64,000 nt of DNA from Mytilus californianus (taxonomy: Eukaryota). The notes under the pieces were generated by a model, which was not told where the DNA came from, made no database searches, and saw only the letters and a program-made list of their open reading frames with translations. The stretch covers positions 21,514,001-21,578,000 of the forward strand of contig NW_026262734.1 in the NCBI RefSeq assembly GCF_021869535.1, read 5' to 3'. The translations under genes were made by a program, and so were the position numbers. This document shows positions 24,077-57,100 of this stretch, piece by piece. The number at the start of each line of letters is the position of its first letter. The first letter of the stretch is position 1.

Positions 24077-24876
24077 TTCGCGATTGTCACATAAGCTAAT
24101 TACGGCAAAAACGGGCACCTGTGAGTGACGTAGTTTAATTTAATTATGAGGGTCGTGACATCTCAGTCAACAAACAAGTGCTATAAACTCTGCGCAATTT
24201 ACAATATCATTCTAATGTAAACTGTTAAAGTATTTTAAAAGTATACAGTTTATTCTATTTATATTAATTTATTGCATGTTATATTTATTCATGTTGATAA
24301 AAATCAAAGATAGTTGATTTAAAATCTGTTTATGCATCAATAAAAGTCTAGCTTCTCAAAAGTTTTGTACTTTTGTTTGACAGGACATAGTTTTGTTGCA
24401 ATCAAACAGCATTACTATTCAAGTCATCACATATGTAATAGGATGTGTATTTATATAAGTCCTTACTTAACGTTTTTTATTTTAACTGCGCGATATCAGC
24501 AGACAAATAGCACATTTTTATAATGATTATGTTTCATGTAACCTGCCAATCCTGTTTTCAACGGCAAGAGCACTGAAAAATTTACACATCTTATGCAGAT
24601 AATTTATTTTTTTTTTAATATCAGTTCATTTTTATACGAAACTAATTTTGAAGCATTCAAATTTCATTGGAAGAATAAGCAATAAATATTGTTTTACGGA
24701 ATTTATGTAAGACTGATTTAGGTTATGAGTGACCATGAAACACATACCAATGAATTCCTTCAAAACCACCTTTATTTATATAATGTTTTATGATATTAGA
24801 AAGATCAAATTCAAATGTATCAATGTTGTTTATCCTTTTCGTTTTTACAGAAAACTGCAAGTCTATTTAAACTTTA

Positions 24877-33195: not shown

Positions 33196-36100
33196 ATGTT
33201 TGGTAAGGTAGATGCTCAGAAGAAAAGTTTTTTAGACCAAACAAAAGCACTAAGAGATGACAGAGCCTATGAGAAGAAGAGACAGATTGCAGTTATCAAA
33301 ATTCAGGCGAGAAGAACCAAAATCTTTAGATTTATATGATAAAGCCCTTGGTGTCTATTCTGGTTTTGAAACCATTTGAATGCCATTTTCATTTCTTTCT
33401 TCAGGCTCAGGTTAAACCTTTGTATATAATTCATACTCCAAGTTAAACTTTATAGACTTGCAATTTTTATACGACCGCAAAAAAATTTTGTGGTCGTATA
33501 TTGGTATGACGTTGGCGTCGTCGTCGTCGTCGTCGTCGTCGTCCGGCGTCGTCGTCGTCGTCCTGCGTCGTCGTCCGAATACATATTGGTTTTCGCACTC
33601 TAATTTTAGTTTAAGTGAATGGATCTTTTTGAAATTTGACCATAAGGTTAAATACCACAAAAGGAAGGTTGGGATTGATTTTGGGGGTTATGGTACCAAC
33701 AGTCAAGGAATTAGGGGCCAAAAAGGGGCCAAAAATGAGCATTTTCTAGTTTCCAGACAATAACTGTGGAACGGTGTATGGATCTCTCTGAAATTATACT
33801 ACAAGTTTCCATACCACAAAGGGATGGTTAGGATTTGCTTTGGGGGGTTATGGCTCATACCGTTTAGGAATTAGGGGCAAAAAAGGGGGAAAAACAAGGT
33901 TGTCCTGGTTAATGGACAAATACTTTAGTACAAAACATAATTTAAAGCAGTGTAAGGGAGATAAATCAAATACATCATTGAAATTATCTCCCTTACATTG
34001 CTTTTAAATTATGTATAAAGTAATGGTTAATGAACAATAAAGATAATCTAAAACAGTGTAAGGGAGGTAATCCAAATACAACGTTTTGGTTACTTCCCTT
34101 ACACTGCTTTTAAATTATGTTTAAAGAAATGCATATTTATAAAGGAAGACCAGTAAAAATATCTGCAAATGTTTTCATCTTTTTTTTTTACAAAAAAATC
34201 CATATGAAAGATTTGACACTATATTTTTATTAATTCTATTATAAAATAGATTAAGTTAGCACTATGGTAAATTTAAATGGGTAATTATGGTTGCCAACTC
34301 CATTGGAAATTTGAATTGAGATTATGACCATATCTTGAGGGAAAGAATTTTTTTGGGGGAAAAAGGGGGGGGGGATAAAAAGAAATTGTGGGGGGCCAAT
34401 TTTTTCTCATTTCAGATTTCAGAAATTAAAAAGAATTATTCTTCAAATATTATTTTTTTTTCAAATTTCAAATATTGAAAAATTTCAAGAAGTAATCTTT
34501 AATTGCACAGTATGGCGCATTAGATTTGTAAAATCTTTGATCACATTTATTTATTTGTTATGCCGAATCTAACAGTGTATTTAGATTTTTAATTTTGGGT
34601 CCAGTTTTCAAATTGGTCTACATTAATGTCCAAAGGGTCCAAAATTAAACTTTGTTTGATTTTAGCAAAAATTGAATATATGAGGTTCTTTGATATGCTG
34701 AATCTAAACATGTATTTAGATTTTTGATTTTTGGCCCAGTTTTCAAGTTGGTCCAAATTGGGGTCCAAAATTAAACTTTGTTTGATTTCAACAAAAATTG
34801 AATATATGGGGTTCTTTGATATGCTGAATCTAACCATGTATTTAGATTTTTTATTTGTGGACCCCGTTATCTAATTGGTTCATATTGAGGTCAAAAGGGT
34901 CCAAAATTAAACTTTGTTTGATTTCATCTAAAATTGAATTATTGGGGTTCTTTGATATTCCAAATCTAACCGTGTATTTAGGTTTTTAATTTTGGGTCCT
35001 GTTTTTTAAATTGGTCTACATTGAGGTCCAAAGGGTCCAAATTAAACTTAGTTTGATTTTAACAAAAATTGAATTCTTGGGGTTCTTTGATTTGCTGAAT
35101 CTAAACATGTGTTTAGATTTTTGATTATGGGCCCAGTTTTCAAGTTGGTCCAAGATAGGTTCCAGTATTTAAACTTTGTTTGATTTCAACAAAAATTGAA
35201 TATATGGGGTTCTTTGATATGCTGAATCTAAACATGTATTTAGATTTTTGATTATGGGCCCAGTTTTCAAGTTGGTCCAAATTGGGGTCCAAAATTAAAC
35301 TTTGTTTGATTTCAACAAAAATTGAATATATGAGGTTCTTTGATATGCTGAATCTAACCATGTATTTAGATTTTTTATTTGTAGGCCCCGCTATCAAATT
35401 GGTTCATATTGAGGTCAAAAGGGTCCAAAATTAAACTTTGTTTGATTTCATCGAAAATTGAATTATTGGGGTTCTTTGATATGCCAAATCTAACCGTGTT
35501 TTTAGATTTTTAATTTGGGTCCTGTTTTTTAAATTGGTCTTCATTGAGGTCCAAAGGGTCCAAAATTAAACTTAGTTTGATTTTAACAAAAATTGAATTC
35601 TTGGGGTTCTTTGATATGCTGAATCTAAACATGTGTTTAGATTTTTGATTATGGGCCCAGTTTTCAAGTTGGTCCAAGTTGGGGTCCAAAATTATATTTT
35701 TTTTGATTTCAACAAAAATTGAATATATGGGGTTCTTTGATATGCTGAATCTAACCATGAACTTAGATTTTTTATTTGTGGCCCCGCTATCAAATTGGTT
35801 CATATTGAGGTCAAAAGGGTCCAAAATTAAACTTTGTTTGATTTCATCAAAAATTGAATTATTGGGGTTTTTTGATATTCCAAATCTAACCGTGTATTTA
35901 GATTTTTAATTTTAAGTCCCGTTTTTTAAATTGGTCTACATTAAGGTCCAAAGGGTCCAAAATTAAACTTAGTTTGATTTTAGCCAAAATTGAATTCTTG
36001 GGGTTCTTTGATATGCTGAATCTAAACATGTGTTTAGATTTTTGATTATGGGCCCAGTTTTCAAGTTTGTCTAAGTTGGGGTCCAAAATTAAACTTTGTT

Positions 36101-39100
36101 TGATTTTAACAAAAATTGAATATATGGGGTTCTTTGATATGCTGAATCTAACCATGTATTTTGATTTTGGACATTGGACCATAATAGGTAAATTAAAAAA
36201 AATCAAGTTCTTAGACCACATTCTTTCTGTGTCAGAAACCTATGCTGTGTCAAATATTTAATAACAATCCAAATTCAGAGCTGTATCAAGCTTGAATGTT
36301 GTGTCCATACTTGCCCCAACTGTTCAGGGTTCAACCTCTGCGGTCGTATCAAGCTGCGCCCCAGCGAAGCATTTTATTATGTCTTATTATGGATAGAAAC
36401 ATTTTTTTTTGCAAATTGTAATTGTTTATTGTCATTTCGCATTTTGGGTCCTTGATCGATCAAGTAAAATAAAAAAAAAATTATAAAAATATTTGTTGAA
36501 AATATGATACATGGAAAATTTGGTTTGGTACTATAAACAAGATTGAACACTTATTATTTGTGACTATACTTATAAATAGATGTCGTACAACAATGTTATA
36601 AACAGTACAGGAAGACATAGATATAAGAAGATGTGGTATGAGTGCCAATGAGACAACTCTCCATCCAAGTAAAAATTTATAAAAGTAAACCATTATAGGT
36701 CACAGTAAGGTCTTCAACACGGAGCCTTGGCTCACACCGAACAGTAAGCTATAAAGGGCCCCAAAAAAATTACTAGTGTAAAACCATTCAAACGGGAAAA
36801 CCAACGGTCTAATCTATATAAAAAACGAGAAACGAGAAACACTTATGAACCACATCAACAAACGACAACTACTGAACATCAGATTCCTGAACATGCATGA
36901 TATGATCATGATGATCTTCTGCAATGTACAGAGTAAACATGGTAGACTTGTTCAGTATTTAAAACCTGGATACATCACATTTTAACATTTTTAAATAGAA
37001 GAACAATGTAGAATGAATAACAATTACATTGTATTTGAATAAGATTTTAAACTTTAGACCACTAAAAGATAGAATAAGAACAGTATTGTACATGCACTCA
37101 TGATTCTGAGAGAAGTAGGCTTTTAATTATCTGTTTTACAATTTATTTTACAGTGTGTGGTACGTGGATTCCTTGAGAGACGTAGACTTACAAGATCAAT
37201 AAAGTAAGAAACTGACCAATTCTGTCGTGAGAATCTACATATTATAAAAGATGATTTCTGTGTCTACATGAACAAAACTTCATGCAAATAGCTAATTAAT
37301 ACAAAAACAAAAAGACATTTGTAGGTCCACATACACTTAAACAAGATAGGTATTGACTATGTCGCATAACCTGTGATATAAGTAGTTGTTGATGATTGAA
37401 GGTGATGGCACTCTGATTTACTACCCTCCTATGTATAACCTTTGTTATAAAACACTGAGATATTTCAGATTGAATCACCCAAAATCACCAGCATTCACTG
37501 TGAGATTCACCGTCGTGGAGAGTAATCTTTTAAACAAGTAACACCTTGTACAGATTGTCGGTATTTAAATATAACAATAAACAAATATATACGAGATATA
37601 TTCAGCTTAAAATCACAAAGACATATAGAATAATTGCATTTTTGAAAATGACTGTATCAGCAAGAATATCAAGCAAGGGCTGGCTGATGAAGTCATTTAA
37701 AAAAATAAAATGTTATTATTCTTTTTATCGTCAATTTTGTCTAAACAATATTATTTTTGGTTTAAGAATACAAACTAAAGTGAAATAGTTAGTAAAATTA
37801 TGTTTATGCATACTATACTTGTGATAGTTATTCGGTTGTATGAATGAAGTCGCATCCATTGCATTGATTAATTGACGTGGATAGACATGAAAGTGTGACA
37901 TTGCTGCACTGTTACATGAGGTCATTGTTGCACTGTTACGTGAGGTCATTGCCTAATATTTTTTAATATCAGGTCCTGTCCATGATATAGAAAAATATTA
38001 GGCAGTAAGATCATAGGGAAAATGTACAAATTGCAGATAAAGTTAAATGAACCACATTATAAAAATTATTTTCAGCACAAAAACAAAACTCGGGCAGTAA
38101 TAACAGTTTGTTAAATATACAAACAGAAAGACACAGGTACACAAATAAAACAATACTTTGTTATTCTTGTATTATTTACATATCTACAATTACTTGAATA
38201 TGATTAATTGTAAGAATTTCTCTTCTTGGCTTACACTTCAATAGACCTTGTTTTCAAAACTAGTTTTTCTACCTATGTTAACGCTGTGTCTATTTCACTT
38301 TTGCATGATACACATGAATGGAATCCTTGGGTTGGGTTCAAAAAAAGTGAAATTAAAAGAAAAAAAAGAACAATTGTTCAGGTAAAGAATTATAAGGATT
38401 AAACACATTTTGTCTAAAGATTATTGATGTGTAAATTGGTCGCTGACTCACAAACTTTACATAAAAGTCGTGACTTTTATTCAGTTTGTCAGTTAACTGC
38501 CCCAATTAACAAATCAATAACATCTAGAAAAAAAAAATTAAAATCTTATAGAAATTAACATGCAGCTTTTGTATGAATGTTTGTATTTGGCAGATTTTTA
38601 ATGAAACCTAGACCATTATAAGTAGCACACTTCGAAAAAAGTAATGCAACAAAATATTTGATATAACCATGCTAATTTAATGTTGAAATTGACTTATTCT
38701 GAAATGATGAATACTGTTTTCAGTTAGCCTGGTATTTGAATGTTATTTATTTTCCATTAACAAATTATCTCCCCTGAACATCATAGATACACGGATGGAT
38801 ATCTTTTATGTTTGATTACAGAAATGAAGTATCTGGCTTGTTACAGATTCCTACAGACAAAGATAGTGAATATCATCCAAAGTTGAAGCCAGGTAACAAC
38901 ACAAAAAATAACATTAACCTATTAATTTTAGTATGCTAGGTCTATATTTATACAAATGTTGTTTCATCAAATGTTGAAGCACTGAAAAAAAACCCCAAAA
39001 AGACCAAAAGTTAAGCCAAACCTAGAACTATATGTTATTTATTATAGCCGTTAAAAGTCTATAATATTTGATAAAGGGAAGATTTTTACAAAGCAAAGTT

Positions 39101-42100: not shown

Positions 42101-45100
42101 AAAACACTAAGTAGAGTGATTTTTACACACAAGAAAAACCCTGTTTGTACTTTAAATCATGACATGATCTGAATTGTTTTATTTTTAGCCAGAGAACCAT
42201 GTTGACTTTAGTGTGATGATGTTATTGTTGAGAGTTTTAATTGTATTTACCAGTACATCTACATGGAAAATAGTTAAAACTACACCAGGTAAATATCTCA
42301 ATTAGGTATTCCACAGGATGTCCCCTCAAACACTATTACTGAGAGTTTTAATTGTATTTACCAGTAAATCTACAAGGAAAATAGTTTAAAGAACACAAGT
42401 TACATATCTTAGAATCTCAATTAGGTATTCCACATGGTTTCCCCATGTATAATATGACTTTAAAGTTTTATTTTTGAACCAAAGACTGAGGTTGTGAGTT
42501 CGAATCCAACTCGGGGCTAGTGCACTCGACTCCAATCTTAATTGACTAGGATTGTTAATTTTCCTACCGAAGGTCGATGGTTCTCTCCAGGCACTCTGGC
42601 TTCCTCCACCAATAAAAACTGACCGCCACAAAATAGCATAATAGTGTTGAAAGTGGCGTTAAACACCAATCAATCAATCAATTTAAATTTTACAGTTTTA
42701 TCATGAAAGACATTTGTTTCTATGAAAAAAAGATTTTACTGAGATAAAATTGGTTCATATAATGTCCTTGCATAAAAGCACAATTTCTACTACCAAAAAT
42801 AATGTATGAATTGTATCTGAGACAGCTGTGGAAACCAACACTCACTTTTGTCTGAAGCATGCAATATATTTATTATTGATTTTACAATGTTTTTCATTAC
42901 AAACATTTTCACTTCTTTTTTCTCTACTTCTGTCAAATAATGATTCCAGATGATAAGTTAAGCATATTTTGCAGCATTAACTTGCATGATAAATTATCTG
43001 CTCATACAACACATCATCAATTATATATCAGAAATAAATATTTTCCAGCACTTGCGCCAGGTTTAAATCAACTCTGTAACAACATCATGGGTGACCTTAA
43101 CACCAGAGGACTCTACCCTATATTGAAGGTTTGTATTTAATTATACTGATCAAAAATATTTGGAACTTATAGGAGGCGGTGTCATCCTAAATTCCCGGAA
43201 ATTAAAAAGATGAATTCTGAATCTGGAAAAAAAACATTCTTTCCTTGAACCCAAAAAATAAATCATTCCTGAGTCATGATAAGTGTAAAACCTGTATTCC
43301 TACAAAAATAAAGGCCCAATCCTGACTTTCTGAAAAAGGTTCTTCTGCCCCTCACTTCTTCATTGCTCGCTTTAAGTGTGTTCTTTTGTATTTTTTCCAG
43401 ATTATAAATTTTATTTTAGGTCATTTTATATCTTTTTTCTTTGGCATACATATTACTGACAATTAGATGTAAAGACTATTTGAAATATCTGGAGCAAATT
43501 TTATTTGTTACAATGGTTTCAAGTATTTTGTAATTTTTATACGACCGCAAAAAATTTTTTGGGATCGTATAATGGTATGATGTCGTTGTCGTCGTCGTCG
43601 TCGTCACCCGAAGACACATTGGTTTCTGGACAATAACTTTTGTTTAAGAGAATGGATCTCTATGAAATTTTTTAAGAAGGTTCAATACCACAAAAGGAAG
43701 GTTGGGATTGATTTTGGGGATGATGGTCCCAACCGTTTATGAATTAAGGGCCAAAAAGGGGCCAAAAACAAGCATTTTTCTAGTTTCTAGACAATAACTT
43801 GTGTGTAAGTGTATTGATCTCTCTGACATTGTACCACAAGGTTCCATATAACAAAGGGAAGGCTGTGATTGAGTTTGGGGTTAATTGCCCAAACATGTAG
43901 GAATTAGGGGCCAAAAAAGGGCCAAAAACAAACATTTTTCTAGTTTCCAGACAATAACTTGTGTTTAAGTGTATGGATCTCTCTGAAATTGTACTACAAT
44001 GTTCCATACTACAAAGGAAAGGCTGGGATTGAGTTTTGGGGTTATTGCTCCAAGGGGGGTTTCAAAAAGGGGGGGGGGATTTTTTTTCCAATTTGTTTAA
44101 GGGATTCATATATTCATTCTGTAGCTGTTGTTGACAAAGGGTATACAAATCCCACTGTGTCAGTGATATGCACTCAATAATGTTTTATTACTTAATTGAT
44201 AATTGTATGTTTCTGATCTTGGATTATATTTGATATGCAATAAACTCATCAAAGATACCAGGGCCCGTATGCATAAAGCTACTTAAGGGAGTTCGCTTCT
44301 CAGTTTCAAAATAATAAGCTTTTTAAAACACTAGTTTATATTGATAGGGGATGAATAGAGGAATCAAAAGAGCAAAAAAAATATATAGGTCAATGTGCTT
44401 GTTTTCGAGATATTAGCCATTGAAATTTTGGCGGGAAAATGTTCTCTCTTGACTTTTCATAGCTTTATTATTGACAAGTTTAAGTTCTCAAAAACTATCT
44501 AAAAATAATTAAAATGTTATAAGACTTTTACAGATGGCTTATCATTATACATGTAAAGGATTTATAAAAAGAAAAATGGGTGTCAATGGGCAAACTTTTT
44601 TGAGACATTCAAATGGATAAAACCAGAGGATTCCGAAAATCTGACAAAAATTCCAAAACATGACAAGCGAACATCCTTTAGTTAAGATTTGTTCCGAACG
44701 AACAGATTTTTCTACATTTCTTACGATAAATGAGTACTACCATTGGATATCTTAACTTAAGTGGTTTTATGCATATCAGCCCAGGCTTATATTAATGTAC
44801 ACCAGACATCCCATTTCCTCTATAAAGACTCATCAGTGACATACGAATCAAAAAAGTTAAAACTTTGTATGACAAGAAAGGAATTTTATTCAATTTTAAT
44901 TAAATAAATAATAAAGAAGAACTTGAAATGAGCCTGTCACATGTACTGCCAAAAAAAAAAGGTTAATTTTCAGGAATGGATATTGATGGCTTTTTCAAAT
45001 CTTTTTGTAGGGTTTATTAACCAGAGGTCTCTCAAGAACCAAGTGTGCTTTTAACCAGACATCACTTTCTGCAATGGTTACTATAGCTTTGAGGTTAGTA

Positions 45101-48100
45101 AATTTTATATACCGTGACAACCTGAAGTCATTGTTTGAACAAAATTGAACAGAAAAAAACTCCAAATTAATTTGCTATACCACATGTATATGTAAGTAAG
45201 TTTTGACTCAGAGGTGCCAGAAATTATTTCAAAAATCAAAGGACATTCTTTGCTTACATCTTTGTCATTTGGTGTCTGGTGGATAGATGTCTGGTTGGCA
45301 ATCATAGCACATCTTCTTATTGACTGTCGCAGCTTGTTCACTCTTGTTTTTAGATAAGTTGGAAATTCAAAAAAATTATTTATGATATTTTTAAGAAAGT
45401 GTGTTCCATTTTTCATTGTGCATTGTATTGATGAAGGTGATTTTTTGACTTATTTGTAGACCACTGATGGCAGCCAACTTTTCAGACAATCTGCTGACTG
45501 TGTTTGTATTAAACATTATGTCTGTCCCTGCTGTTATACATCATGTGTCCAATCTGTCACAAGAGGTAAATATGTCTGTCCCTGCTGTCATACATCATGT
45601 GTCCAATCTGTCACAAGAGGTAAATATGTCTGTACCTGCTGTTATACATCATGTGTCCAATCTGTCACAAGAGGTAAATATGTCTGTCCCTGCTGTCATA
45701 CATCATGTGTCCAATCTGTCACAAGAGGTAAATATGTCTGTACCTGCTGTTATACATCATGTGTCCAATCTGTCACAAGAGGTAAATATGTCTGTCCCTG
45801 CTGTTATACATCATGTGTCCAATCTGTCACAAGAGGTAAATATGTCTGTCCCTGCTGTTATACATCATGTGTCCAATCTGTCACAAGAGGTAAATATGTC
45901 TGTCCCTGCTGTTATACATCATGTGTCCAATCTGTCACAAGAGGTAAATATGTCTGTCCCTGCTGTCATACATCATGTGTCCAATCTGTCACAAGAGGTA
46001 AATATGTCTGTACCTGCTGTTATACATCATGTGTCCAATCTGTCACAAGAGGTAAATATGTCTGTCCCTGCTGTCATACATCATGTGTCCAATCTGTCAC
46101 AAGAGGTAAATATGTCTGTCCCTGCTGTCATACATCATGTGTCCAATCTGTCACAAGAGGTAAATATGTCTGTCCCTGCTGTCATACATCATGTGTCCAA
46201 TCTGTCACAAGAGGTAAATATGTCTGTCCCTGCTGTTATACATCATGTGTCCAATCTGTCACAAGAGGTAAATATGTCTGTCCCTGCTGTCATATATCAT
46301 GTGTCCAATCTGTCACAAGAGGTAAATATGTCTGTCCCTGCTGTTATACATCATGTGTCCAATCTGTCACAAGAGGTAAATATGTCTGTACCTGCTGTTA
46401 TACATCATGTGTCCAATCTGTCACAAGAGGTAAATATGTCTGTCCCTGCTGTTATACATCATGTGTCCAATCTGTCACAAGAGGTAAATATGTCTGTCCC
46501 TGCTGTCATACATCATGTGTCCAATCTGTCACAAGAGGTAAATATGTCTGTCCCTGCTGTTATACATCATGTGTCCAATCTGTCACAAGAGGTAAATATG
46601 TCTGTCCCTGCTGTTATACATCATGTGTCCAATCTGTCACAAGAGGTAAATATGTGTGTCCCTGCTGTTATACATTATGTGTCCAATCTGTCACAAGAGG
46701 TAAATATGTCTGTCCCTGCTGTCATACATCATGTGTCCAATCTGTCACAAGAGGTAAATATGTCTGTCCCTGCTGTTATACATCATGTGTCCAATCTGTC
46801 ACAAGAGGTAAATATGTCTGTCCCTGTTGTTATACATTATGTGTCCAATCTGTCACAAGAGGTAAATATGTCTGTCCCTGCTGTCATACATCATGTGTCC
46901 AATCTGTCACAAGAGGTAAATATGTCTGTCCCTGCTGTTATACATCATGTGTCCAATCTGTCACAAGAGGTAAATATGTCTGTCCCTGCTGTTATACATC
47001 ATGTGTCCAATCTGTCACAATAGGTAAATATGTCTGTCTCTACTGTTATACATCATGTGTCCAATCTGTCACAAGAGGTAAATATGTCTGTACCTGCTGT
47101 TATACATCATGTGTCCAATCTGTCACAAGAGGTAAATATGTGTGTCCCTGCTGTCATATATCATGTGTCCAATCTGTCACAAGAGGTAAATATGTCTGTC
47201 CCCGCTGTTATACATCATGTGTCCAATCTGTCACAAGAGGTAAATATGTCTGTCCCTGCTGTTATACATCATGTGTCCAATCTGTCACAAGAGGTAAATA
47301 TGTCTGTCCCCGCTGTTATACATCATGTGTCCAATCTGTCACAAGAGGTAAATATGTCTGTACCTGCTGTTATACATCATGTGTCCAATCTGTCACAAGA
47401 GGTAAATATGTCTGTCCCCGCTGTTATACATCATGTGTCCAATCTGTCACAAGAGGTAAATATGTCTGTGTTTACTGTTATACATTGATATCTGATATTG
47501 ACAAAACTTTATTATTCCTTGCTTAGTATATTTCTCAGATTTTGATTGGCTTATGACCGTCGTTAAAAAATCCATAGCCCTGGGTATTGCTAACCCATAT
47601 TCCCAGGCGTTGCTACCCATTACCCTGGGGAAATTCACATGTGTTTTCCTTAGTTCTGTGGTTGTTCCCAGTCAAAAATTGAATTCTGTAGATTATCCAT
47701 GATTTCTAAATATATAATCCACTAACGATGCTATCCTATTATGCCGATCATTGGAATTCATTTTAGTAAATGAATCTTTTGGCTACCACATCGCCAATAA
47801 GTCTACATCACCAATGAATGGGACAACTGACCTAGTTATGCAAATGACGAATGTTGATATCACACTGTCTATGACATAATGCTTGGCACGTACATTGAGT
47901 GCCAAATTTGATTTAAACTTTTTTTTTCCTGTTTCCAGATTAAAAGCGTCTTATTTTTTACTACAACTAGGATTTTACCCTAGACCCAGTAAAATATATG
48001 TAAAATTTCCAAATTTCTATAAAAACTTTCTAGATAAAAAAAAAAATGTTGCTTTCACGTTACACTTTGTGCCTGAATTTCCCCCCAAAAAATCGCCTGA

Positions 48101-51100
48101 ATCGGACTAAGACGGGGATAAATTTGTTATATAAGTTCATATCTGTAGATATGGGTATTTTAACACCTTGAAGTACCCCAGTACAATCTGAGGTTGCCTC
48201 AGGGTGTACTTGGTGTACTGGGGTACTTCAGGGTGTTAAAATACCCATATCTACAGATATGAATGTATATAACGAATTTATCCCCGGTCTTAATCTAAAT
48301 GGGCGATTTTTGATTTGATATGAGCGTAGATGACTCACTTTAACTCATGTGCAATACTCATTATCATATGTATGACAGAGGATATTCACAAGGTAAATAG
48401 TGGGTGTCTTTTGAGGATGTCACCTGAGGTAAAAAAAAAATTTTCTGCTGTCATTTATATTATATTGAGGATGTCACCCTAGTTAAACATTTTGTGTCAC
48501 AGCTGTCATACATAATGCAAGTTAACGGTAATGTTAAGAAAACAGACTCTTAATAGTTGCACTTACATTGAAAATCTTTTATATTGTTTTTTTTTCTTCA
48601 AATAGTTGAAATATTGTTGCTAAACTTCTTGTAATTTGTTTTATTACCTAGTACTTTTAAGATAATAAATTTTATAATTTTAGGTCTATTATTCTTTAAG
48701 AAAGAAGCATAAGTAAAAAGGATGATATGTAATTATAAATTGAGGGCTTTTGTCTACCATGCAGCTTTTGTTCTGTGTAGGGGTTGGTACCATAATAAAG
48801 TTAATTGAAGAAATCAAGCTATTATTTTGATGTTAAATCACTCTGAAATGTATAAAGAAATTTAAATTTAGTAGTTAATGCCAATAGATAATCAATTTGC
48901 ACTTATTTTTTCAGTGTCTGACTGTACTGGTAACTCACAGACTATTTAAGAGATCTCTAGATCTACTGTCAAATGAACAAAGTACCAGAATTATTTTCAA
49001 TACCTTAGAAGGAAACTATGCACTATGCTTGCTGGGTGGGTATTGGTTGATTTTTATAAAGATCTTGTTCAACAATAAGAAAGAAACTATACTAATTATG
49101 ATAATTATAATAACTGCCTATATTTAATATGGTTAGCTGTGGTTTAAATGTTGGTGTCAGCTTATTTGAAATTAAAAACAAAAAGTACATGCTTATCATT
49201 TTATGACGACTATAAAATAGGAATGTTAAAGAATTTGCCATTTTTACTTTTTTTAAGACTAATGAGATGGTCTGAAGCTGAAAATTCTGTTTTTTTTTTC
49301 TTTTGCAGCAAACATGGTACATCTTGGTTTTGTAGAATTAGAGGTAAGTGTTTATGTTTATATAATGTCAGAGCAAAAATGCTATGAGGTTGTTTTCCAC
49401 AAGTCAGAAAAATATATGATACTCATTGGATAAGAAATCAAATTAATGAACAATTATTATGTGTAACTTTAATAGTGCATTTGGGGCTAGTATTTCCCAG
49501 TTTCATTATGTTTAGAAAAAAATATGAAAACTATTATCTGACATTGCTTAATGTTTTTGCTCAGATGCTTGTATGCATCAGTTTATTATAATATACTAAG
49601 TGAATTTTGTTGTTGTTGTAATTTAAAATAAACAAGATATATTTCTAAGGAGAAACTGATTATAATGGTAAATTAACATATTTTCAAATGCAGTAGTGTT
49701 GTTCAAACATTGGCCTTTATTTTAAAATACAGACAACTTGATTCAGTATTTCAATATTACATGAACAAGAATTATTATTGTTTCAGGGTCTTGTTGAAAA
49801 TACAATCAAATTTATGGTAAGTAAATGAGTATAAAATAGTTTTGTTTTATTTGTTATTTTCATTGATATGTTATTATAATTGTGATATTCATGCATATAT
49901 AATATATTATCAAGGGGAGATAATTTGATTGATTGTGGCTTGGTTAACTCCAGTGGCAAAAGATAATTTGAAAATATTTAGTAATGAATTATTCTTCTAT
50001 ATAAAATTAAGGAATTGTGGTATGACTGTCAATGAGACAACTATCCACCAGAGTTCAAATGAAGTGGATATAAACAATTATAGGTCAATGAGACAACTAT
50101 CCATCAGAGTTCAAATGAAGTGGATATAAACAATTATAGGTCAATGAGACAACTATCCACCAGATTTGAAATGAAGTGGATATAAACAATTATAGATCAA
50201 TGAGACAACTATCCACAAGAGTTCAAATGAAGTGGATATAAACAGTTATAGGTCAATGAGACAACTATCCACCAGAGTTCAAATGAAGTGGATATAAACA
50301 ATTATAGACTAATGAGAAAAACCCATACTGTATATAGTCAGCTATAAAAGGCCCTGACATGAAAAATGTGAGCCAATCAAGCAACAAAACTACTAGCCTA
50401 ATTTATAACAAAACAATTTACGAAAAACAAATATGACAGACATGAACCAACGACAACCACTGAACTACAGGCTCCTGACTTGGGACAGGCACTTAAAGAA
50501 TGTGATGGAGTTAAACATGTTTGTGAGCGCTCAACCCTCCCCTTACCTAGGATAGTGGTGCAACAGCACAACATAAAAACACACTGTAAAAATCTGTTGC
50601 AATTTTAATAGCTGAACTCAAAAGATTGATACAAGCCTATAAACAATAAACATAAAAACAATAGACATAAAGCACTGATATAAGAGTACTTGCAGTTACT
50701 GAAAGCTAGTTCAAAGCCAATAACATTTAATAAAGAAAACATATTCTTCTTCCAGACTCAAGTATCAGTCAGTACACATCTAATGAATTTATAGTAAGGA
50801 CTTCATAAATTGTCTGAGAAATGCATGACCTTTTAGCAATATATACATCATAACCTGACCTTCAATCAAATTACTACTACTATCTATTCCATAATTAAAT
50901 GATACATTAATTAACGATAGAAAACAACAAATATAACATTCCAACAATCCAAAATCTGGTTGATAGTTTCTTGTTAATGATCATACCATTCTTGTTGTTT
51001 TATTTAATTGTTTAGTGTTCGGTTTATGAAGTTTCTAATTGGTCAACTACTGTTTCAATTATTTGATTTGTTGCTGCAAAAAAATGAAGATTCATTATTT

Positions 51101-54100
51101 CTATTTATAGACAGTTGTTATTCGGCTTCTGGAAAACTGTAAGAAATATGTACAGAATAAAAAATCAAGTTTAACTCACTGGCATCCTGTTCTGGGCTGG
51201 TTTTCCCAGAAGACAGATCCAAGGTAAGAGGATAAATGATTTTAGGCATTTTAAAGTAAAGTTATCTCTATGATATGAATTTTGAGTTACGCAAATCTGA
51301 GTGACTAAATCCAAAAGCCTTCTGCCTTTTATTACCTGATTACTCTATAATTGGTTTTAATCATTAACAATTGGACAGATGACAGAAGCTACCAAAAACA
51401 ATCGAAAAAGATGTTTATGATGAAGCAATAGCCATCAAACAACGACACATTAATGTTGTACAAAGTAAATAAGTAAGTAAGTAAAACTTTATTTTGATTC
51501 GGCATATTGACAAACATATTACAACATAAGCTCTAATGAGCTTTTCACCGAATATAAAAACATATGCAATAACAAGTAAAACAAGGCATGCAGCATGCAA
51601 ACAAATTGTAATAAAACAGCACCAAATGTTTGATTTTTAATATGTCAGTTTTTATAGCTGTTTTTGAGGGTTTTTTTTTTTTTTCATGAAACATTGATGT
51701 AGTTAAATTTGCTGTATGGAATCTGTTGATATTTAACACACTGAGTGGTTTCCTCAAGACCAGGTTGCTTTCACCATTGACTCTTTTAAGATTTGTTGTT
51801 CCAAAGTTATTATATTCTATTTGTGAAAAAATTTATACAATTTACTGTTGTCTCATGATTTTTCCAGTTTACTTTACAGATTTTTATTGAATGACGATAC
51901 ATTTTCTATGTATGTCCTTGAGTTTAAGATCTGACTTAGAATTAAGGGACTTTCTTTCTTAATTCATCAATTACAAGCATTTTTATATCAGATAAATCAA
52001 AATACTGAAACAGGAGATTCTTAAATTTTTTTCTAATATAATTTTTTCTATTTTCAGTTTGCATGCATCTATGCCGTTTGTAGTTAAACAGTTACAGTTA
52101 TTATGGAGTGAAAAGATGATAAGACTGATGTTTGCTGATCTCTTAAACTACATAGAAATAGATACAGAGAAAGCCAGTAAAAATCCTTCACCTTCAAAAA
52201 GTAGGTCACCACATCCTAATCTTAATCTTCACTGAATTATATATAAATCCGTAGAAAACCAACACAATTTTCTGTCTTCAAAGAGAAGGTTACTGCTTTT
52301 GAATCTGCATTAAAAAAACAATTATTCACTTTCCAAAATAAGGTCAAAACATCTCAATTAATTAGACTTTTGCTAACAAAGCCAATAGAATGATTCACAT
52401 AATCTTAATGTACATAGAAAAAATCCTGATAGTGCCAACAAAAAATTCTGCATCTTGGAGAAATAAATTATTGCATCTGAAATCTTCATAGAAATTTCTA
52501 CTTAAAGCAGTCAGGGGTGTTACTTAAACAAGTTATTTTTTTAAGTTACTTATATAAGTAATTTTTGTTTTTAAAAATAATAAAATTACTTAATAGAGTT
52601 ATTTTAAATTTCAATAGAAGCATAGACTAAATGTAGTTTTCATGAATTTTTACATCATTTTATATCATAAAATAAAGAATTTATTAGATTTGAGAGGAGT
52701 ATAGAGATAAAGGGTTACTTTAAAAATAATGACAAAAATATTACTTGAATAAGTTATTTTATACATTTTTGAAAAAAATAGTAATAACACTTATTGAAGG
52801 AACATATGTAATTGATTTTGGTTACAAGTTATAAATAACTTCAAGTCTTAATTAATTCACAAGTATTAATCTATTTATATCAGTCTGCCTTCAAGATTTT
52901 GGAGGAAAATGATAATTTAATAGTCCCATGAGACCAATCTTTGACCCAGAAGCGTCAGTATGAAAGATAAGTGCGTCAGAAAGTTAATTAGTGTTTCAGA
53001 AGGATTAGATTTTATATTTCATGGGAAAAATAACCAGATGACTGTGAAAATTTGTTAAAGCTACTAAAATCTGTATAATCCGACACCTATAAAAATAATA
53101 TTCAGAAAAGTTACTTATATAAGTAATATTTAAAATAGCCTCGTTTTCAACATTACTTGTATAGGTAATTTTAATTGTTACTTATTTAAGTAATGCCCCT
53201 GACTGTAAAGAGAAAAACTATAAATCTCTTAATTTCTCTACATCATAACAGAATTTTTCTAGAGAGAAAGCAAATTCTAAAATAATCTTTTGTATCTTGA
53301 CATGCATATTGATACAGATCTTGCAAACAGAAAAAAAACCAATTCCTTTCATAAGAAGGTAACTGTTGATTAATTGACAAGAAAATGTATGCATAGAAGT
53401 TGCAGTACATATTTTATAATCAATATTTATGTTATGCATTTATTGTGTTAAAGCATATTAATTTTTGTTATAGATATATTGAAGAAAGCACTAGATAAAG
53501 CTTCAACAAAATCATCAGGATCTAAAATCAAATTAGATAGTTCTGTTAGTACCTCTACATGTCTACCATGTGTCCTATACCAGAGAACAATCAACACTTT
53601 ATCACAACTCAGAATGGATATTCTTGGAGGTAAGATAAATCAACACTTTATCTTAATTCAGAATGGATATACTCAGAGGTAAGTCAACACTTTATCACAA
53701 CTCGGAATGGTTCACTTGAGATGAGATGGATTAAAACCATGTTTTAATTGTCATAATTGATATTGTCTAACTGTCTTTGAGATAGGTTGCTTGTTGAGAG
53801 ATAACTCAACACTTTATTATAACTCAGGATGTATATACTGAGTGGCAAGTTGTCTATTTTAAAAGTAAGTTACATGATTATCACTGAACATAACCAACCC
53901 GTTGTTTAAATTTAGTCACGTGTATTAGTTTCTTGTTGAAAGTCTTAATAACAGTATATTCAAAGTTAAATGAGATCAGTGTCTAATAAAACAAGTCCCC
54001 TTACAACATCATATAAACTAGATATATTTCAATGTTACAGGTTTAAGTTACAATGATGTATTATTACCAATTTTGTGGAAGTTTTTAGTGGACCTTGGAC

Positions 54101-57100
54101 CAAATTGTGGATTGAAGAGTTTTTTAGAGCTTCTTAGTCAAGCACCAAACAGTACTATTCACCCAGTATTTAGTCTTCTGACCGTGTTTTGTGATGCAGC
54201 CAGTCATTTCATTATGTAAGTATGTCTAGCCTGTCTATTAATTAGGAATGTTTAGTTATTTTGTAGGTCGTTTTATATATATTGCTCCAGTGACCTATAG
54301 TTGCTCACTTCAACATCATTTGGTGTCTGTGGAAAGTTGTTTCATTGGCAATCATACCACTTTTTCTTATTTTTATATTGAAAATATGTAAGTTAGATAT
54401 TAAACATTTTAAGCCTTGTTCAAATATTGTTTTTAAGTACAATTTGCAGTGTTCAGACATTTTAGCTTGATTTTTCACCTGATCATGGATACATTAGGAC
54501 TGTTAGGAATACTTTTGCAGTTATTCATTATCTTTTTGAATCCTGGAACATATGAAAACATGATATATATAGAATAATGGCATTTTTGTTTTTGATACTG
54601 ACTATCGAGAGAGCCGCTTAGTTGCGAGCAGAAAGTTGTTGGGTTGTATGAATGAAGTCTTGTGCATTTCATTGATAAATTGATGCGGAAAACCTTGAGC
54701 ATGTGACATTGCTGCACTGATACATAACATCATTGCCTAATATTTTCGAGTATCAAGTCCTGTCCATGATCTTAAAAATATTAGGCAGTAAGATCAAAGG
54801 AAAAATGTGCAAATTGCAGATAAAAAGAATTAGTAGGTTTTTTATTTGACAGATTCCTTATTAGTGTTTACCATACTTGTAAAAAAGTCCTGTCCAAATT
54901 ACTTATAGTAAAAACATGTAGGTTTCTACACCTATAATATCCTGGCAGACAAATACTGTTGATTCTTTACTATTCATTGGATACCAATTTTCATGGATTT
55001 GGTAGGTGAACCATGAATTTAAATGTTCAACAAATTTCAAATTTTCTATAAGCTTGTATGGAGACTTTGGCGAAACCAAGAAATCATATACCCACGAAAT
55101 GCAAATTTTCTTCAATCCATGCAAATTGATACCCACTAAAATCAATTCATACAAACTGATACCCACTAAAATGAATCCACAGAAGCAATAAGAAGGTGAA
55201 CTTTAGAATATTGGAACACTTAAATAATAATCAAAATTGACAACAACACTTCAACTGGTCTGCAGACCAGTTGAAGTGTTGTTGTCAATTTTGATTATTA
55301 TTTAAGTGTTGCATTCATTTGCATTATTTGAGAACCTGGCATACCAAAGTATCCACTTCATGGACTCTACCGAAAGGATTCACACATGTGTTGGTTCATC
55401 AGATGGAGTTTAATTTAGAATATTGCATATAGTGAGTTAGTGTAAAAGAGCGTTTGTTATACTGCTGTTTTGTAAACATTGTAGAACATTGGATGATATT
55501 GAAATGTATGAACAAGGCAGATTATTCAAACTTGAAGATTATGTAAAAATCAGTGAATTTCTGAACTGTTTTGTTTTCCGTGTTATCTGGAACAACTTGA
55601 TAGGTAAGTACTAGGATGATGCTGTAATGTAATCACAGTTAGTCAGTTAATATATGAATAAGGAGATGTGGTATGATTGCCAATGAGACAACTCTCCACC
55701 AGATATCAAATGACTAAGATATAAGCAATTATAGGTCACTGTATGGCCTTGTGCAATGAGAAAACCCCATACCATATATGTATAGTCAGCTATTAAAGGC
55801 CCTGACACGAAAAAAAAAAAAATCAGGAGCCTGTAAATGAGTTTTTGTTGTATACCTTATTTGTTTTCTGTTTATAGTTTTTGCAGAAAATAGGCCAATA
55901 GTTTTCTCTTTTTAATTGTTTCACATTTTTTTCCTGTTGAAATTTTTGCAATTTTAGAAAGATTGCAAAAATTTCAGATTTTACTCCAATCTGGATATCT
56001 TGAAAGATGTCCTGCAATGTTTTATATCATTATATTTCTTATTTCCCTTAAGCAATACATTTTACTTTCTGCAAAAAAAACTAATCATACAATATACCCT
56101 TGTATTTATAGACACAACAACAGCATTAACGTCTGATGTGTTTGGATCAACTCGTGGTCTATTGATGATACTCTATGAAAGAGATTGTAGACGAAGTTAT
56201 ACTCCTCCTAATCACTGGTTAATCAGGTAGGTACCTGTTAAAGTCACTGGGTTGTGAGGTAGGCATACCAAACTTTACCTCTAAAATAACTGGTTAATCA
56301 GGTAGGCATAACTTCTACTTTATTTGGTCTCTAGTGAAGAGTTGTCTCATTGGCAATCATACCACATCTTCTTTTATACTAAACTACATCCTTCAAAATC
56401 TGGTTAATGATCCCGTACACAGACTTAGCAACAAATCACTGATTTCTGATTGTGATTTCATTAATTGCTGCATATAAATAATGCCATAAAAATCTTTAAT
56501 GCCAGTTTTTCTTTTTGCAAAAATTTTTTAATATACATTTACCTGTTAGGTATACTTAACAACACCCTTCAGATCATGTAAATTTTGCAGTTAGATTGAA
56601 ATACACCTTCATCAAACCATAATTGGTTTATTAAAACTACCTACCTAGCACAATTTTTAGTGCAGGCTCACTGTACTATATCCTTTCAATTCACTTAGTT
56701 AAAAATTTCAAATTTTGCATTGATTTAAAATCAAAAGTTTAGATCTTTAATTAACAATACTTATATAATTACAAAAATAACACACAAATGGAGTGTTAAA
56801 ACAGTAATCAAACCGTAAATAACTAACAAGGAAATAAATGAACAAATCTTAACTGGTTATATGACTGCAAAGAGGTATAGTAATGGTCAATTTTCATCCA
56901 AAAAAAAATTAAACAAACATTTAATTGATATTTTCCAGAGCACACTTGATAAGACCAAACATATTTGAGGTCTTTATTCATTTTGACATCCTCTAAGAAG
57001 ATTTAATATATACTTCAAGGTGGAGAAAGATATTAGATATTCATCAATGACACAGCAATCCTACAACACAGAACAAATAAATGACAGCTAGATGCCAACA

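What the first reader, a model, noticed from the sequence alone, without database searches (positions are those of the whole stretch)
45460..47486. A splice-donor minisatellite: 36 in-phase copies of the UBE3B exon-10 end plus its GT donor
Seen: the 54-bp unit is exactly the last 16 codons of a conserved exon ([16 protein letters not shown], matching human IMSVPALVTHLSTVTPE as recalled) plus gtaaat. GAG|GTAAAT donors therefore recur every 54 nt from 45566 to 47456. The unit is 18 codons, so splicing from donors 2-27 to exon 11 (phase 0) stays in frame and adds 1-26 copies of [18 protein letters not shown]. Unit 28 has gag>tag, so donors 28-36 give premature-stop products. The microhomology tatgtctgt, present in the exon (attatgtctgt) and at the intron start (aatatgtctgt), explains the origin by slippage. 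The commonest unit variants are synonymous in the coding frame (gtc/gta, gtt/gtc, cct/ccc), though array homogenisation could produce this too. Inference: either the spliceosome picks 1 of 36 identical donors with high fidelity, or the locus acts as a VNTR-tunable dial for repeat-length isoforms and NMD-routed dosage of a conserved E3 ligase.
Basis: partly seen in the sequence, partly recalled or inferred. Interest (0 to 1): 0.85.

Follow-up and report, generated by a model that had tools for sequence, protein, structure and literature searches.

The report
Splice-donor minisatellite in mussel UBE3B
In the California mussel's UBE3B gene, the last 48 bases of coding exon 10 plus its splice donor are copied 36 times in tandem into the intron; this is a large new example of a known repeat type ("mirage" minisatellites, as in human F7) and is most likely silent, but no RNA could be examined here.

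Summary
A 54-bp tandem array (45518-47485; 36 full units plus a 24-nt partial unit; 96% matches; no indels) starts inside coding exon 10 of a UBE3B orthologue. It repeats GAG|GTAAAT every 54 nt. Unit 28 reads TAG.

The window is Mytilus californianus (GCA_021869535.1). Its RefSeq protein, all four Mytilus orthologues (1060 aa each), octopus and eight other orthologues run from SQE straight into exon 11 with no gap. That fits use of donor 1 only.

The array is absent from M. trossulus, M. edulis and M. galloprovincialis. Their intron still begins with a degenerate 24-nt copy of the unit start in two of them, and a shorter remnant in M. edulis. So an ancestral 1.44-copy duplication expanded in the M. 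californianus lineage.

The kind is known: human F7, IFI6, CBS, LMNB2 and PDGFA donor VNTRs, and amphioxus "mirages". In those, the most upstream donor is used almost exclusively.

This scan has already noted the same kind on other DNA of this genome (UPB1, ANKS3, WDR44, MRPS15, Lifeguard).

Other lineage-specific donor-spanning arrays sit at other UBE3B exons in Mytilus and scallop. Only 2 of 7 unit lengths are multiples of three.

The parts
45011..45093 (+). Coding exon 9 of UBE3B (...[27 protein letters not shown], ending in a split Arg codon). Boundaries are approximate. In M. edulis and M. galloprovincialis this exon's donor carries its own 73-bp array.
   Evidence: tblastn with Mytilus and octopus UBE3B proteins; donor GAG|GTTAGT at 45093/45094
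45460..45565 (+). Coding exon 10 (106 nt; (R)[35 protein letters not shown]). Its last 48 nt form the exonic part of unit 1 of the array.
   Evidence: aligned to orthologues
45566..45571 (+). Authentic (most upstream) 5' splice site, GAG|GTAAAT. It matches 7 of 9 positions of MAG|GTRAGT, which is average for this gene.
   Evidence: the RefSeq 1060-aa protein and orthologues run SQE|C with no insertion
45518..47461 (+). 36 full 54-bp units in register with the exon. Each is the last 16 codons of exon 10 plus GTAAAT. There are 10 unit types, mean pairwise identity is 97.4%, and unit 1 equals the consensus.
47021..47023 (+). TAG in unit 28 (GAG>TAG). It closes the coding frame for any product spliced at donors 28-36.
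47462..47485 (+). Partial, diverged 37th unit (20/24 identical to the unit start). It is orthologous to the first 24 nt after GTAAAT in the M. trossulus and M. galloprovincialis intron, so it is a relic of an ancestral 1.44-copy duplication.
47486..48914 (+). Unique remainder of intron 10.
48915..49035 (+). Coding exon 11 ([40 protein letters not shown] + 1 nt). It starts in phase 0, after acceptor ttttttcag|, and is followed by donor G|GTGGGT.
53589..53710 (+). Second donor-spanning repeat in the same gene: 49 bp x 2.6, 80% matches, covering the end of the exon ...[11 protein letters not shown] and its GTAAG donor. The unit is not a multiple of 3. M. trossulus has 44 bp x 3.0 at the same exon.
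56205..56312 (+). Exon end ...NHWLIR|GTAGGT followed by two further degenerate copies of (A)CTGG(G)TT..AG|GTAGGCATA. This gives three donors within about 100 nt.
   Evidence: scan note s1-307285

Best explanation
This is a "mirage"-type splice-donor minisatellite: a tandem array whose first unit spans an exon-intron boundary.

Origin. Before the Mytilus species split, a short tandem duplication across the exon-10/intron-10 border of UBE3B left a 24-nt direct repeat 54 nt apart (1.44 copies). In the M. californianus lineage, replication slippage or unequal exchange between these repeats expanded it to 36.4 copies. The array is kept homogeneous (97% identical) by the usual array turnover.

Splicing. 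The pre-mRNA therefore carries 36 nearly identical 5' splice sites. The most upstream one closes a normal 106-nt exon, so it is the site chosen by exon definition or 5'-to-3' scanning. The other 35 units leave with the intron. The mature mRNA and the 1060-aa protein are unchanged, and the array behaves as a neutral, probably length-variable, intronic VNTR.

What is shown: the array and its register, the gene, its absence from three congeners, the ancestral partial copy, and the canonical gene model.

What is inferred: exclusive or near-exclusive use of donor 1, neutrality, and length polymorphism.
For: Array and register.

Gene is UBE3B:
- Pfam HECT hits on three exons.
- Best solved-structure hit is the UBE3C HECT domain.
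- Dozens of hits are named ubiquitin-protein ligase E3B.

Species: window 32196-64000 is identical, 0 mismatches in 31,805 nt, to the M. californianus locus that encodes XP_052075193.1.

Gene model:
- That RefSeq protein is 1060 aa, as are the M. trossulus, M. edulis and M. galloprovincialis proteins. No longer isoform sits in the 90% cluster.
- Octopus and eight other orthologues align SQE|C... across the exon 10/11 junction with no gap.

Lineage: there is a single donor in three congeners. The intron begins with the degenerate 24-nt copy in M. trossulus and M. galloprovincialis; M. edulis keeps only about 13 nt of it.

Precedent:
- In human F7 (37 bp x 5-9), LMNB2 and PDGFA only the first donor is used. 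In IFI6 and CBS the first donor plus the next two are used. Mutagenesis shows the downstream sites work but do not compete (PMC1557585).
- Amphioxus mirages do not disturb splicing (PMC3087553).

No sign of coding use:
- Seven donor-spanning arrays in bivalve UBE3B have unit lengths 54, 49, 44, 73, 61, 50 and 48. Only 2 of 7 are multiples of three, as expected if the units are never translated.
- Of 10 variant sites, 3 are synonymous and 7 are not, one being a stop. The neutral expectation is 24% synonymous.
- The predicted fold of exon 10 plus three units shows no masking structure, z = +1.64.
Against: Donor choice therefore rests on an annotation model and on analogy.

IFI6 and CBS show that the second and third donors of such arrays can be used constitutively. 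Donors 2 and 3 here would make exons of only 160 and 214 nt and stay in frame.

Two patterns are not what simple neutrality predicts:
- The three variants that have spread through the array are exactly the three synonymous ones (P = 1/120 given the 10 sites).
- Nine of the 10 variant sites lie in the first 25 nt of the unit (Fisher P = 0.003).

Both tests are post hoc. The variant counts are copies within one array, not independent events.
Confidence: 0.8

Rival explanations
1. Several donors are used. Transcripts spliced at donors 2-27 carry 1-26 in-frame copies of an 18-residue insert, and those spliced at donors 28-36 are routed to NMD. Array length would then tune UBE3B isoforms or dosage.
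For: The unit is 18 codons and the frame stays open for 27 units. All donors and their 48-nt upstream context are identical. In IFI6 and CBS the two pseudo-sites nearest the authentic donor are used as well. The high-frequency variants are all synonymous.
Against: The RefSeq model gives a single 1060-aa protein with no +18n isoform in its cluster. No orthologue has an insert at this position. Sister arrays in the same gene family are mostly out of frame. F7 mutagenesis shows that downstream identical sites do not compete. An open frame across a repeat follows automatically once one unit is open; a second frame is also open for 688 codons. By distinct sites, the substitutions look neutral and include a stop.
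Confidence: 0.1
2. The array is kept because it does something as RNA or DNA without being translated. It might be a cluster of U1 snRNP sites that helps define exon 10 or suppresses premature cleavage in the intron. Or its units might be held exon-like because unequal exchange can move any unit into the exon position ("selection by proxy").
For: The 3' half of the unit, including the donor, is almost invariant: 1 variant site in 29 nt against 9 in 25 nt (P = 0.003). Only synonymous variants have spread. Among the larger arrays in seven bivalve UBE3B loci, 8 of 18 are exon-derived, more than the roughly 9-20% expected from target size.
Against: Three congeners manage with a single donor. The tests are post hoc and the samples small. 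Array homogenisation alone can spread any variant. No experiment bears on this.
Confidence: 0.07
3. The array, or its length, is an assembly artefact.
For: Raw reads could not be inspected. Repeats are a classic place for assembly errors.
Against: The array holds 10 different unit types in a non-periodic order, with no indels. It has clean unique flanks, and its distal flank is orthologous to the congeners' intron start. Similar arrays occur at other exons in four other independent assemblies.
Confidence: 0.03

Closest known systems
Human F7 intron 7 VNTR, with the sister cases IFI6 (6-16) intron 2, CBS intron 13, LMNB2 and PDGFA intron 4 (Borensztajn et al. 2006, PLoS Genet, PMC1557585)
   Same: It is a minisatellite whose first monomer spans the exon-intron boundary, so the authentic donor is followed by many identical pseudo-donors. 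The copy numbers are of similar order (IFI6 has 25 pseudo-sites, CBS 15-20 repeats, PDGFA 16-18 x 81 bp). The gene product is normal because the most upstream site wins.
   Different: Here 48 of the 54 nt in each unit are exonic, against 4 of 37 in F7. Each unit therefore carries a full 16-codon exon end with any exonic enhancers, and the unit is in frame. The host is a bivalve. Donor usage has not been measured here. Polymorphism has not been shown within the species, only between species.
Amphioxus "mirage" minisatellites (Adh3 and globin genes BflGb6 and BflGb9; Ebner et al. 2010, PMC3087553, citing Canestro et al.)
   Same: These are tandem duplications of exon-intron boundaries in an invertebrate, with units of 10-160 bp. 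They show concerted evolution inside the array, with edge units left out of it. They are unstable in length, and regular splicing is reported as undisturbed.
   Different: The amphioxus arrays described have few copies (about 3-6 in the globins). This one has 36. It is also one of many in a mussel genome, with independent arrays at other exons of the same gene in related species.
Internal gene duplications across splice sites as a source of new introns (the Rogers AGGT model; Gao and Lynch 2009; both as cited in PMC3087553)
   Same: A tandem duplication that carries a splice signal is tolerated because one copy is spliced out with the intron.
   Different: No new intron or exon has been created here. 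Intron 10 has simply grown by about 1.9 kb.

Membership tests
Mirage / splice-donor minisatellite (first monomer spans an exon-intron boundary) | Head-to-tail tandem array with a minisatellite-sized unit (about 10-160 bp) | tested here: met
   54 bp x 36.5 copies, 96% matches, no indels
Mirage / splice-donor minisatellite (first monomer spans an exon-intron boundary) | The first unit contains the authentic exon end and its 5' splice site, so the donor is reiterated in the intron | tested here: met
   Unit 1 (45518-45571) is the last 48 nt of exon 10 plus GTAAAT. There are 36 donors in register. The exon boundary is fixed by orthologue alignment.
Mirage / splice-donor minisatellite (first monomer spans an exon-intron boundary) | Regular splicing is kept: only, or almost only, the most upstream donor is used | not testable with these tools
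Indirect evidence only: the RefSeq model is 1060 aa with a single isoform, and orthologues show no insert.
Mirage / splice-donor minisatellite (first monomer spans an exon-intron boundary) | Length instability or variation (VNTR behaviour), with concerted evolution that leaves out the edge unit | tested here: inconclusive
   Between species: 36.4 copies in M. californianus against 1.44 or fewer in three congeners. Interior units are 97% alike, while the distal partial unit is only 20/24 identical. Variation within the species was not tested.
UBE3B orthologue (HECT E3 ligase) | C-terminal HECT domain | tested here: met
   Pfam PF00632 on exon translations, E = 1.3e-14, 1.9e-8 and 8.9e-5. The window ends before the last exons.
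UBE3B orthologue (HECT E3 ligase) | Nearest relatives over the whole length are proteins called UBE3B, not UBE3C or another HECT ligase | tested here: met
   The exons are colinear with octopus UBE3B at 67% identity over 21 segments. The locus is identical to the one encoding M. californianus XP_052075193.1, 'ubiquitin-protein ligase E3B-like'.
Constitutive multi-donor ladder (as at IFI6 and CBS, where pseudo-sites 1-2 are also used) | mRNAs that contain one or more extra repeat units | not testable with these tools
   There was no access to reads. No annotated protein with +18n residues sits in the 90% cluster.

The most novel reading that the evidence does not exclude
The array may not be fully silent. 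A minority of UBE3B transcripts would use donor 2 or 3 (and perhaps more), giving in-frame +18/+36-residue isoforms. Alternatively, the units are held "exon-competent" by selection, because unequal exchange can put any unit in the exon position. Either would explain why only synonymous variants have spread and why the donor half of the unit is nearly invariant. More broadly, mussel and other bivalve genomes may have a mechanism that preferentially seeds or expands minisatellites at splice junctions.
Probability: 0.12. Interest if true: 0.6.

Novelty: new member of a known kind. Interest (0 to 1): 0.3.

Why it matters
On its own this is a further, unusually large example of a repeat type that is already described and has been dissected experimentally in human F7. 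It is clean, fully in frame and almost wholly exon-derived.

Its value is as a natural test of 5' splice-site choice: 36 identical donors, each with the same 48-nt exonic context, in an animal far from mammals.

It is also one data point in a pattern that looks worth a genome-wide study. Splice-junction minisatellites arise again and again, at different exons and in different lineages, in the bivalve UBE3B genes sampled. According to other notes of this scan, they also occur in many other genes of this mussel genome.

Practically, such arrays can mislead gene predictors. The scallop model may be a case of this.

Tried and rejected

No RNA junctions, no raw-read check of the array and no copy-number variation could be obtained, and read laying was never called.
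- A region search with the amphipod UBE3B P0038 found only 3 proteins.
- A profile search built from arthropod proteins plus single-exon rows from the window returned mostly arthropods and not the mussel protein. The octopus protein as query then reached the bivalves.
- No transcript-derived (Logan) protein of M. californianus turned up in the UBE3B cluster, so there was no cDNA-level evidence by that route either.
- Ostrea edulis P0290 had no locus on record.
- A literature search for mirages in mussels or oysters found nothing relevant in the held library.

**Ideas rejected**
- Purifying selection on the coding frame, judged by distinct variant sites: 3 synonymous of 10 against 24% expected, and another frame has 5 of 10.
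- An RNA structure that masks the downstream donors: z = +1.64.
- A 9-nt microhomology as the origin: the homology is 24 nt and ancestral.
- The open 524-codon frame as evidence of coding: a second frame is open for 688 codons, which is a trivial property of a repeat.

Exons were used singly, by reference, alongside public orthologue proteins.

Full report
**What is in the sequence**

Tandem Repeats Finder reports one array at 45517-47485: period 54, 36.5 copies, 96% matches, no indels, score 3700. This is by far the strongest array in the window.

Read in register with the coding frame, there are 36 full units at 45518-47461. Each translates as [18 protein letters not shown] and ends in GAG|GTAAAT. 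The exception is unit 28, where GAG has become TAG (47021-47023). A 37th, partial unit (47462-47485) matches the unit start at 20 of 24 positions. After that the sequence is unique.

Unit 1 is the real end of a coding exon (45460-45565, 106 nt). The next exon starts at 48915 in phase 0.

**The gene and the organism**

- Three downstream exon translations hit Pfam HECT.
- The best solved structure is the UBE3C HECT domain.
- An exon search of the representative library, followed by two further protein searches, returned many proteins named ubiquitin-protein ligase E3B.
- Octopus UBE3B is colinear with the window over 21 segments at 67% identity.
- The closest proteins are the 1060-aa UBE3B-like proteins of four Mytilus species.
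- The locus encoding the M. californianus protein XP_052075193.1 (assembly GCA_021869535.1) is letter for letter the window from 32196 onward, with 0 mismatches in 31,805 nt.

So the window is California mussel.

**Which donor is used**

What follows is indirect.

- The RefSeq protein of this very locus has 1060 residues, the same as in M. trossulus, M. edulis and M. galloprovincialis. It is the only M. californianus protein in its 90% cluster, with no +18n isoform.
- Its sequence, and those of octopus and eight other orthologues, run ...[15 protein letters not shown]|CLT(V/L)LVTH... across the junction with no gap.
- The donor matches 7 of 9 consensus positions, which is average for this gene.
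- The predicted fold of exon 10 plus three units is, if anything, weaker than shuffled sequence (z = +1.64). No structure singles out the first donor.

**Origin**

The array is absent from M. trossulus, M. edulis and M. galloprovincialis. Each has a single copy of the donor region.

In M. trossulus and M. galloprovincialis the intron nevertheless begins, after GTAA(AT), with ATATCTGTTTTTGTTGTCATACAT. This aligns to the partial 37th unit of M. californianus and is a degenerate copy of the first 24 nt of the unit. M. edulis keeps about 13 nt of it before its sequence diverges.

The ancestor therefore already carried a 1.44-copy duplication across the exon-intron border. That is a 24-nt direct repeat spaced 54 nt apart, an obvious substrate for slippage or unequal exchange. 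The growth to 36.4 copies is specific to the M. californianus lineage. Alternatively, an older array collapsed in the other lineage.

The homology is longer and older than the 9 nt proposed.

**Is there selection on the units?**

The array has 10 variant sites. In the coding frame, 3 are synonymous and 7 are not, and one of the 7 is a stop. The neutral expectation is 24% synonymous, so counted by sites nothing departs from neutrality. One of the other frames even has 5 synonymous sites of 10.

Two oddities remain:
- The three synonymous variants are exactly the three that have spread (11, 6 and 3 units, against at most 2 for the rest). Given the ten sites, P = 1/120.
- Nine of the ten sites lie in the first 25 nt of the unit (Fisher P = 0.003).

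Both tests are post hoc. The counts are copies within one array, not independent events. I record them as unexplained rather than as evidence of function.

**What is known**

The literature search found that this is a described class.

- Borensztajn et al. 2006 (PMC1557585) list human genes with a minisatellite whose first monomer spans an exon-intron boundary: F7 intron 7 (37 bp x 5-9), IFI6 (25 pseudo-sites), CBS (15-20 repeats), LMNB2 (100 bp x 10-15) and PDGFA (81 bp x 16-18).
- In F7, LMNB2 and PDGFA only the authentic, most upstream donor is used. In IFI6 and CBS the next two are used as well.
[quoted passage not shown] The authors call this a 5'-to-3' scanning rule.
- In amphioxus such arrays are called "mirages" (Adh3, globins). 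They are reported not to disturb splicing, to be unstable in length, and to evolve in concert except at the edges (PMC3087553).

The present array has all the structural hallmarks. The splicing hallmark could not be tested.

**The same thing elsewhere in this gene, in relatives and in this genome**

In the window, two more exons of UBE3B have short donor-spanning repeats: 53589-53710 (49 bp x 2.6) and 56205-56312. A first-reader note (s1-307285) had flagged the second.

In other species I found independent arrays at other exons:

| Species | Array | Exon end covered |
|---|---|---|
| M. edulis | 73 bp x 17.1 | exon 9 |
| M. edulis | 61 bp x 9.1 | ...FRVIWNNLI |
| M. edulis | 50 bp x 13.8 | ...HRSRIVE |
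| M. galloprovincialis | 73 bp x 3.1 | exon 9 |
| M. galloprovincialis | 61 bp x 10.1 | ...FRVIWNNLI |
| M. trossulus | 44 bp x 3.0 | ...LRMDILG |
| Argopecten irradians | 48 bp x 27.9 | ...PHIIPFSE |
| Mactra antiquata | 51 bp x 17.5 | acceptor-side array; the last copy is the authentic acceptor |

The Mytilus proteins are all 1060 aa and the scallop and clam proteins 1064 and 1063 aa, so none shows a large insert.

Only 2 of the 7 donor-array unit lengths are multiples of three. That is what one expects if the units are never translated.

Across seven bivalve UBE3B loci, 8 of the 18 arrays with at least 5 copies and a period of at least 20 are exon-derived. Target size predicts roughly 9-20%, which gives binomial P between 8e-5 and 0.016. 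The test is crude and the loci are not fully independent.

Other notes of this scan report the same kind of array in other genes of this genome: UPB1, ANKS3, WDR44, MRPS15, Lifeguard and an OLAH-like gene. Several follow-ups state that RNA showed only the authentic copy in use. I did not check those claims and treat them as leads.

**Verdict**

The best explanation (confidence about 0.8) is a silent, lineage-specific mirage-type splice-donor minisatellite, in which the first donor is used and 35 decoy units leave with the intron.

The isoform/NMD-dial reading is not excluded. Donors 2 and 3 are the plausible candidates, by analogy with IFI6 and CBS. It has no positive support.

The novelty is that of a new, large, in-frame member of a known kind. 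The wider recurrence at splice junctions in bivalves is the more interesting lead.

**Limits**

Exons were used one by one, by reference.

Noticed in passing
L003:11543-12792, L003:30462-31014, L003:34242-34938 (M. edulis); L007:11746-11973, L007:21695-22308 (M. galloprovincialis); L001:29014-29144 (M. trossulus): Independent donor-spanning minisatellites sit at other UBE3B exons in other Mytilus species: 73 bp x 17.1 and x 3.1, 61 bp x 9.1 and x 10.1, 50 bp x 13.8, and 44 bp x 3.0. None is at the exon-10 position. All the proteins are still 1060 aa.
   Followed up: partly
L008:23650-25130 (Argopecten irradians UBE3B): A 48 bp x 27.9 array derives from the end of the exon ...[11 protein letters not shown]. 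The first, authentic-looking copy has a 1-nt deletion that breaks the frame. The RefSeq protein ([16 protein letters not shown]) matches only unit 12, the single unit with ATA at 24296. Either the assembly has an indel that the gene predictor worked around, or the functional exon end has moved into the array, as in the mirage-to-new-intron model.
   Followed up: partly
L010:16169-17061 (Mactra antiquata UBE3B): An acceptor-side mirage: 51 bp x 17.5 copies of ...ttgtag|GTTTATTCAAGA. The last copy is the authentic acceptor of the exon [11 protein letters not shown]....
   Followed up: partly
seven bivalve UBE3B loci (L001, L002, L003, L007-L010): Among arrays with at least 5 copies and a period of at least 20 bp, 8 of 18 contain exon-derived sequence. 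That is more than the roughly 9-20% expected from target size. No mechanism is known. The test is crude and the loci are not fully independent.
   Followed up: partly
window 56205-56312: The exon end ...NHWLIR|GTAGGT is followed by two degenerate copies of the donor region, giving three GTAGG donors within about 100 nt. TRF does not detect this.
   Followed up: partly
window 34554-36168 and 50028-50307: Large, purely intronic arrays in the same gene: 397-bp higher-order repeat x 4.1 (126-136 bp sub-repeat x 11-12) in intron 1, and 56 bp x 5.0. They look like the usual bivalve intronic satellite or transposable-element-derived repeats.
   Followed up: no
window 45518-47461: The unit order ABCBCAAABCBBBADACABAAEBAFBAGHCIJAJCJ shows short period-2 runs (BCBC near the 5' end, JAJCJ at the 3' end). 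This suggests some two-unit (108-bp) duplication steps.
   Followed up: no
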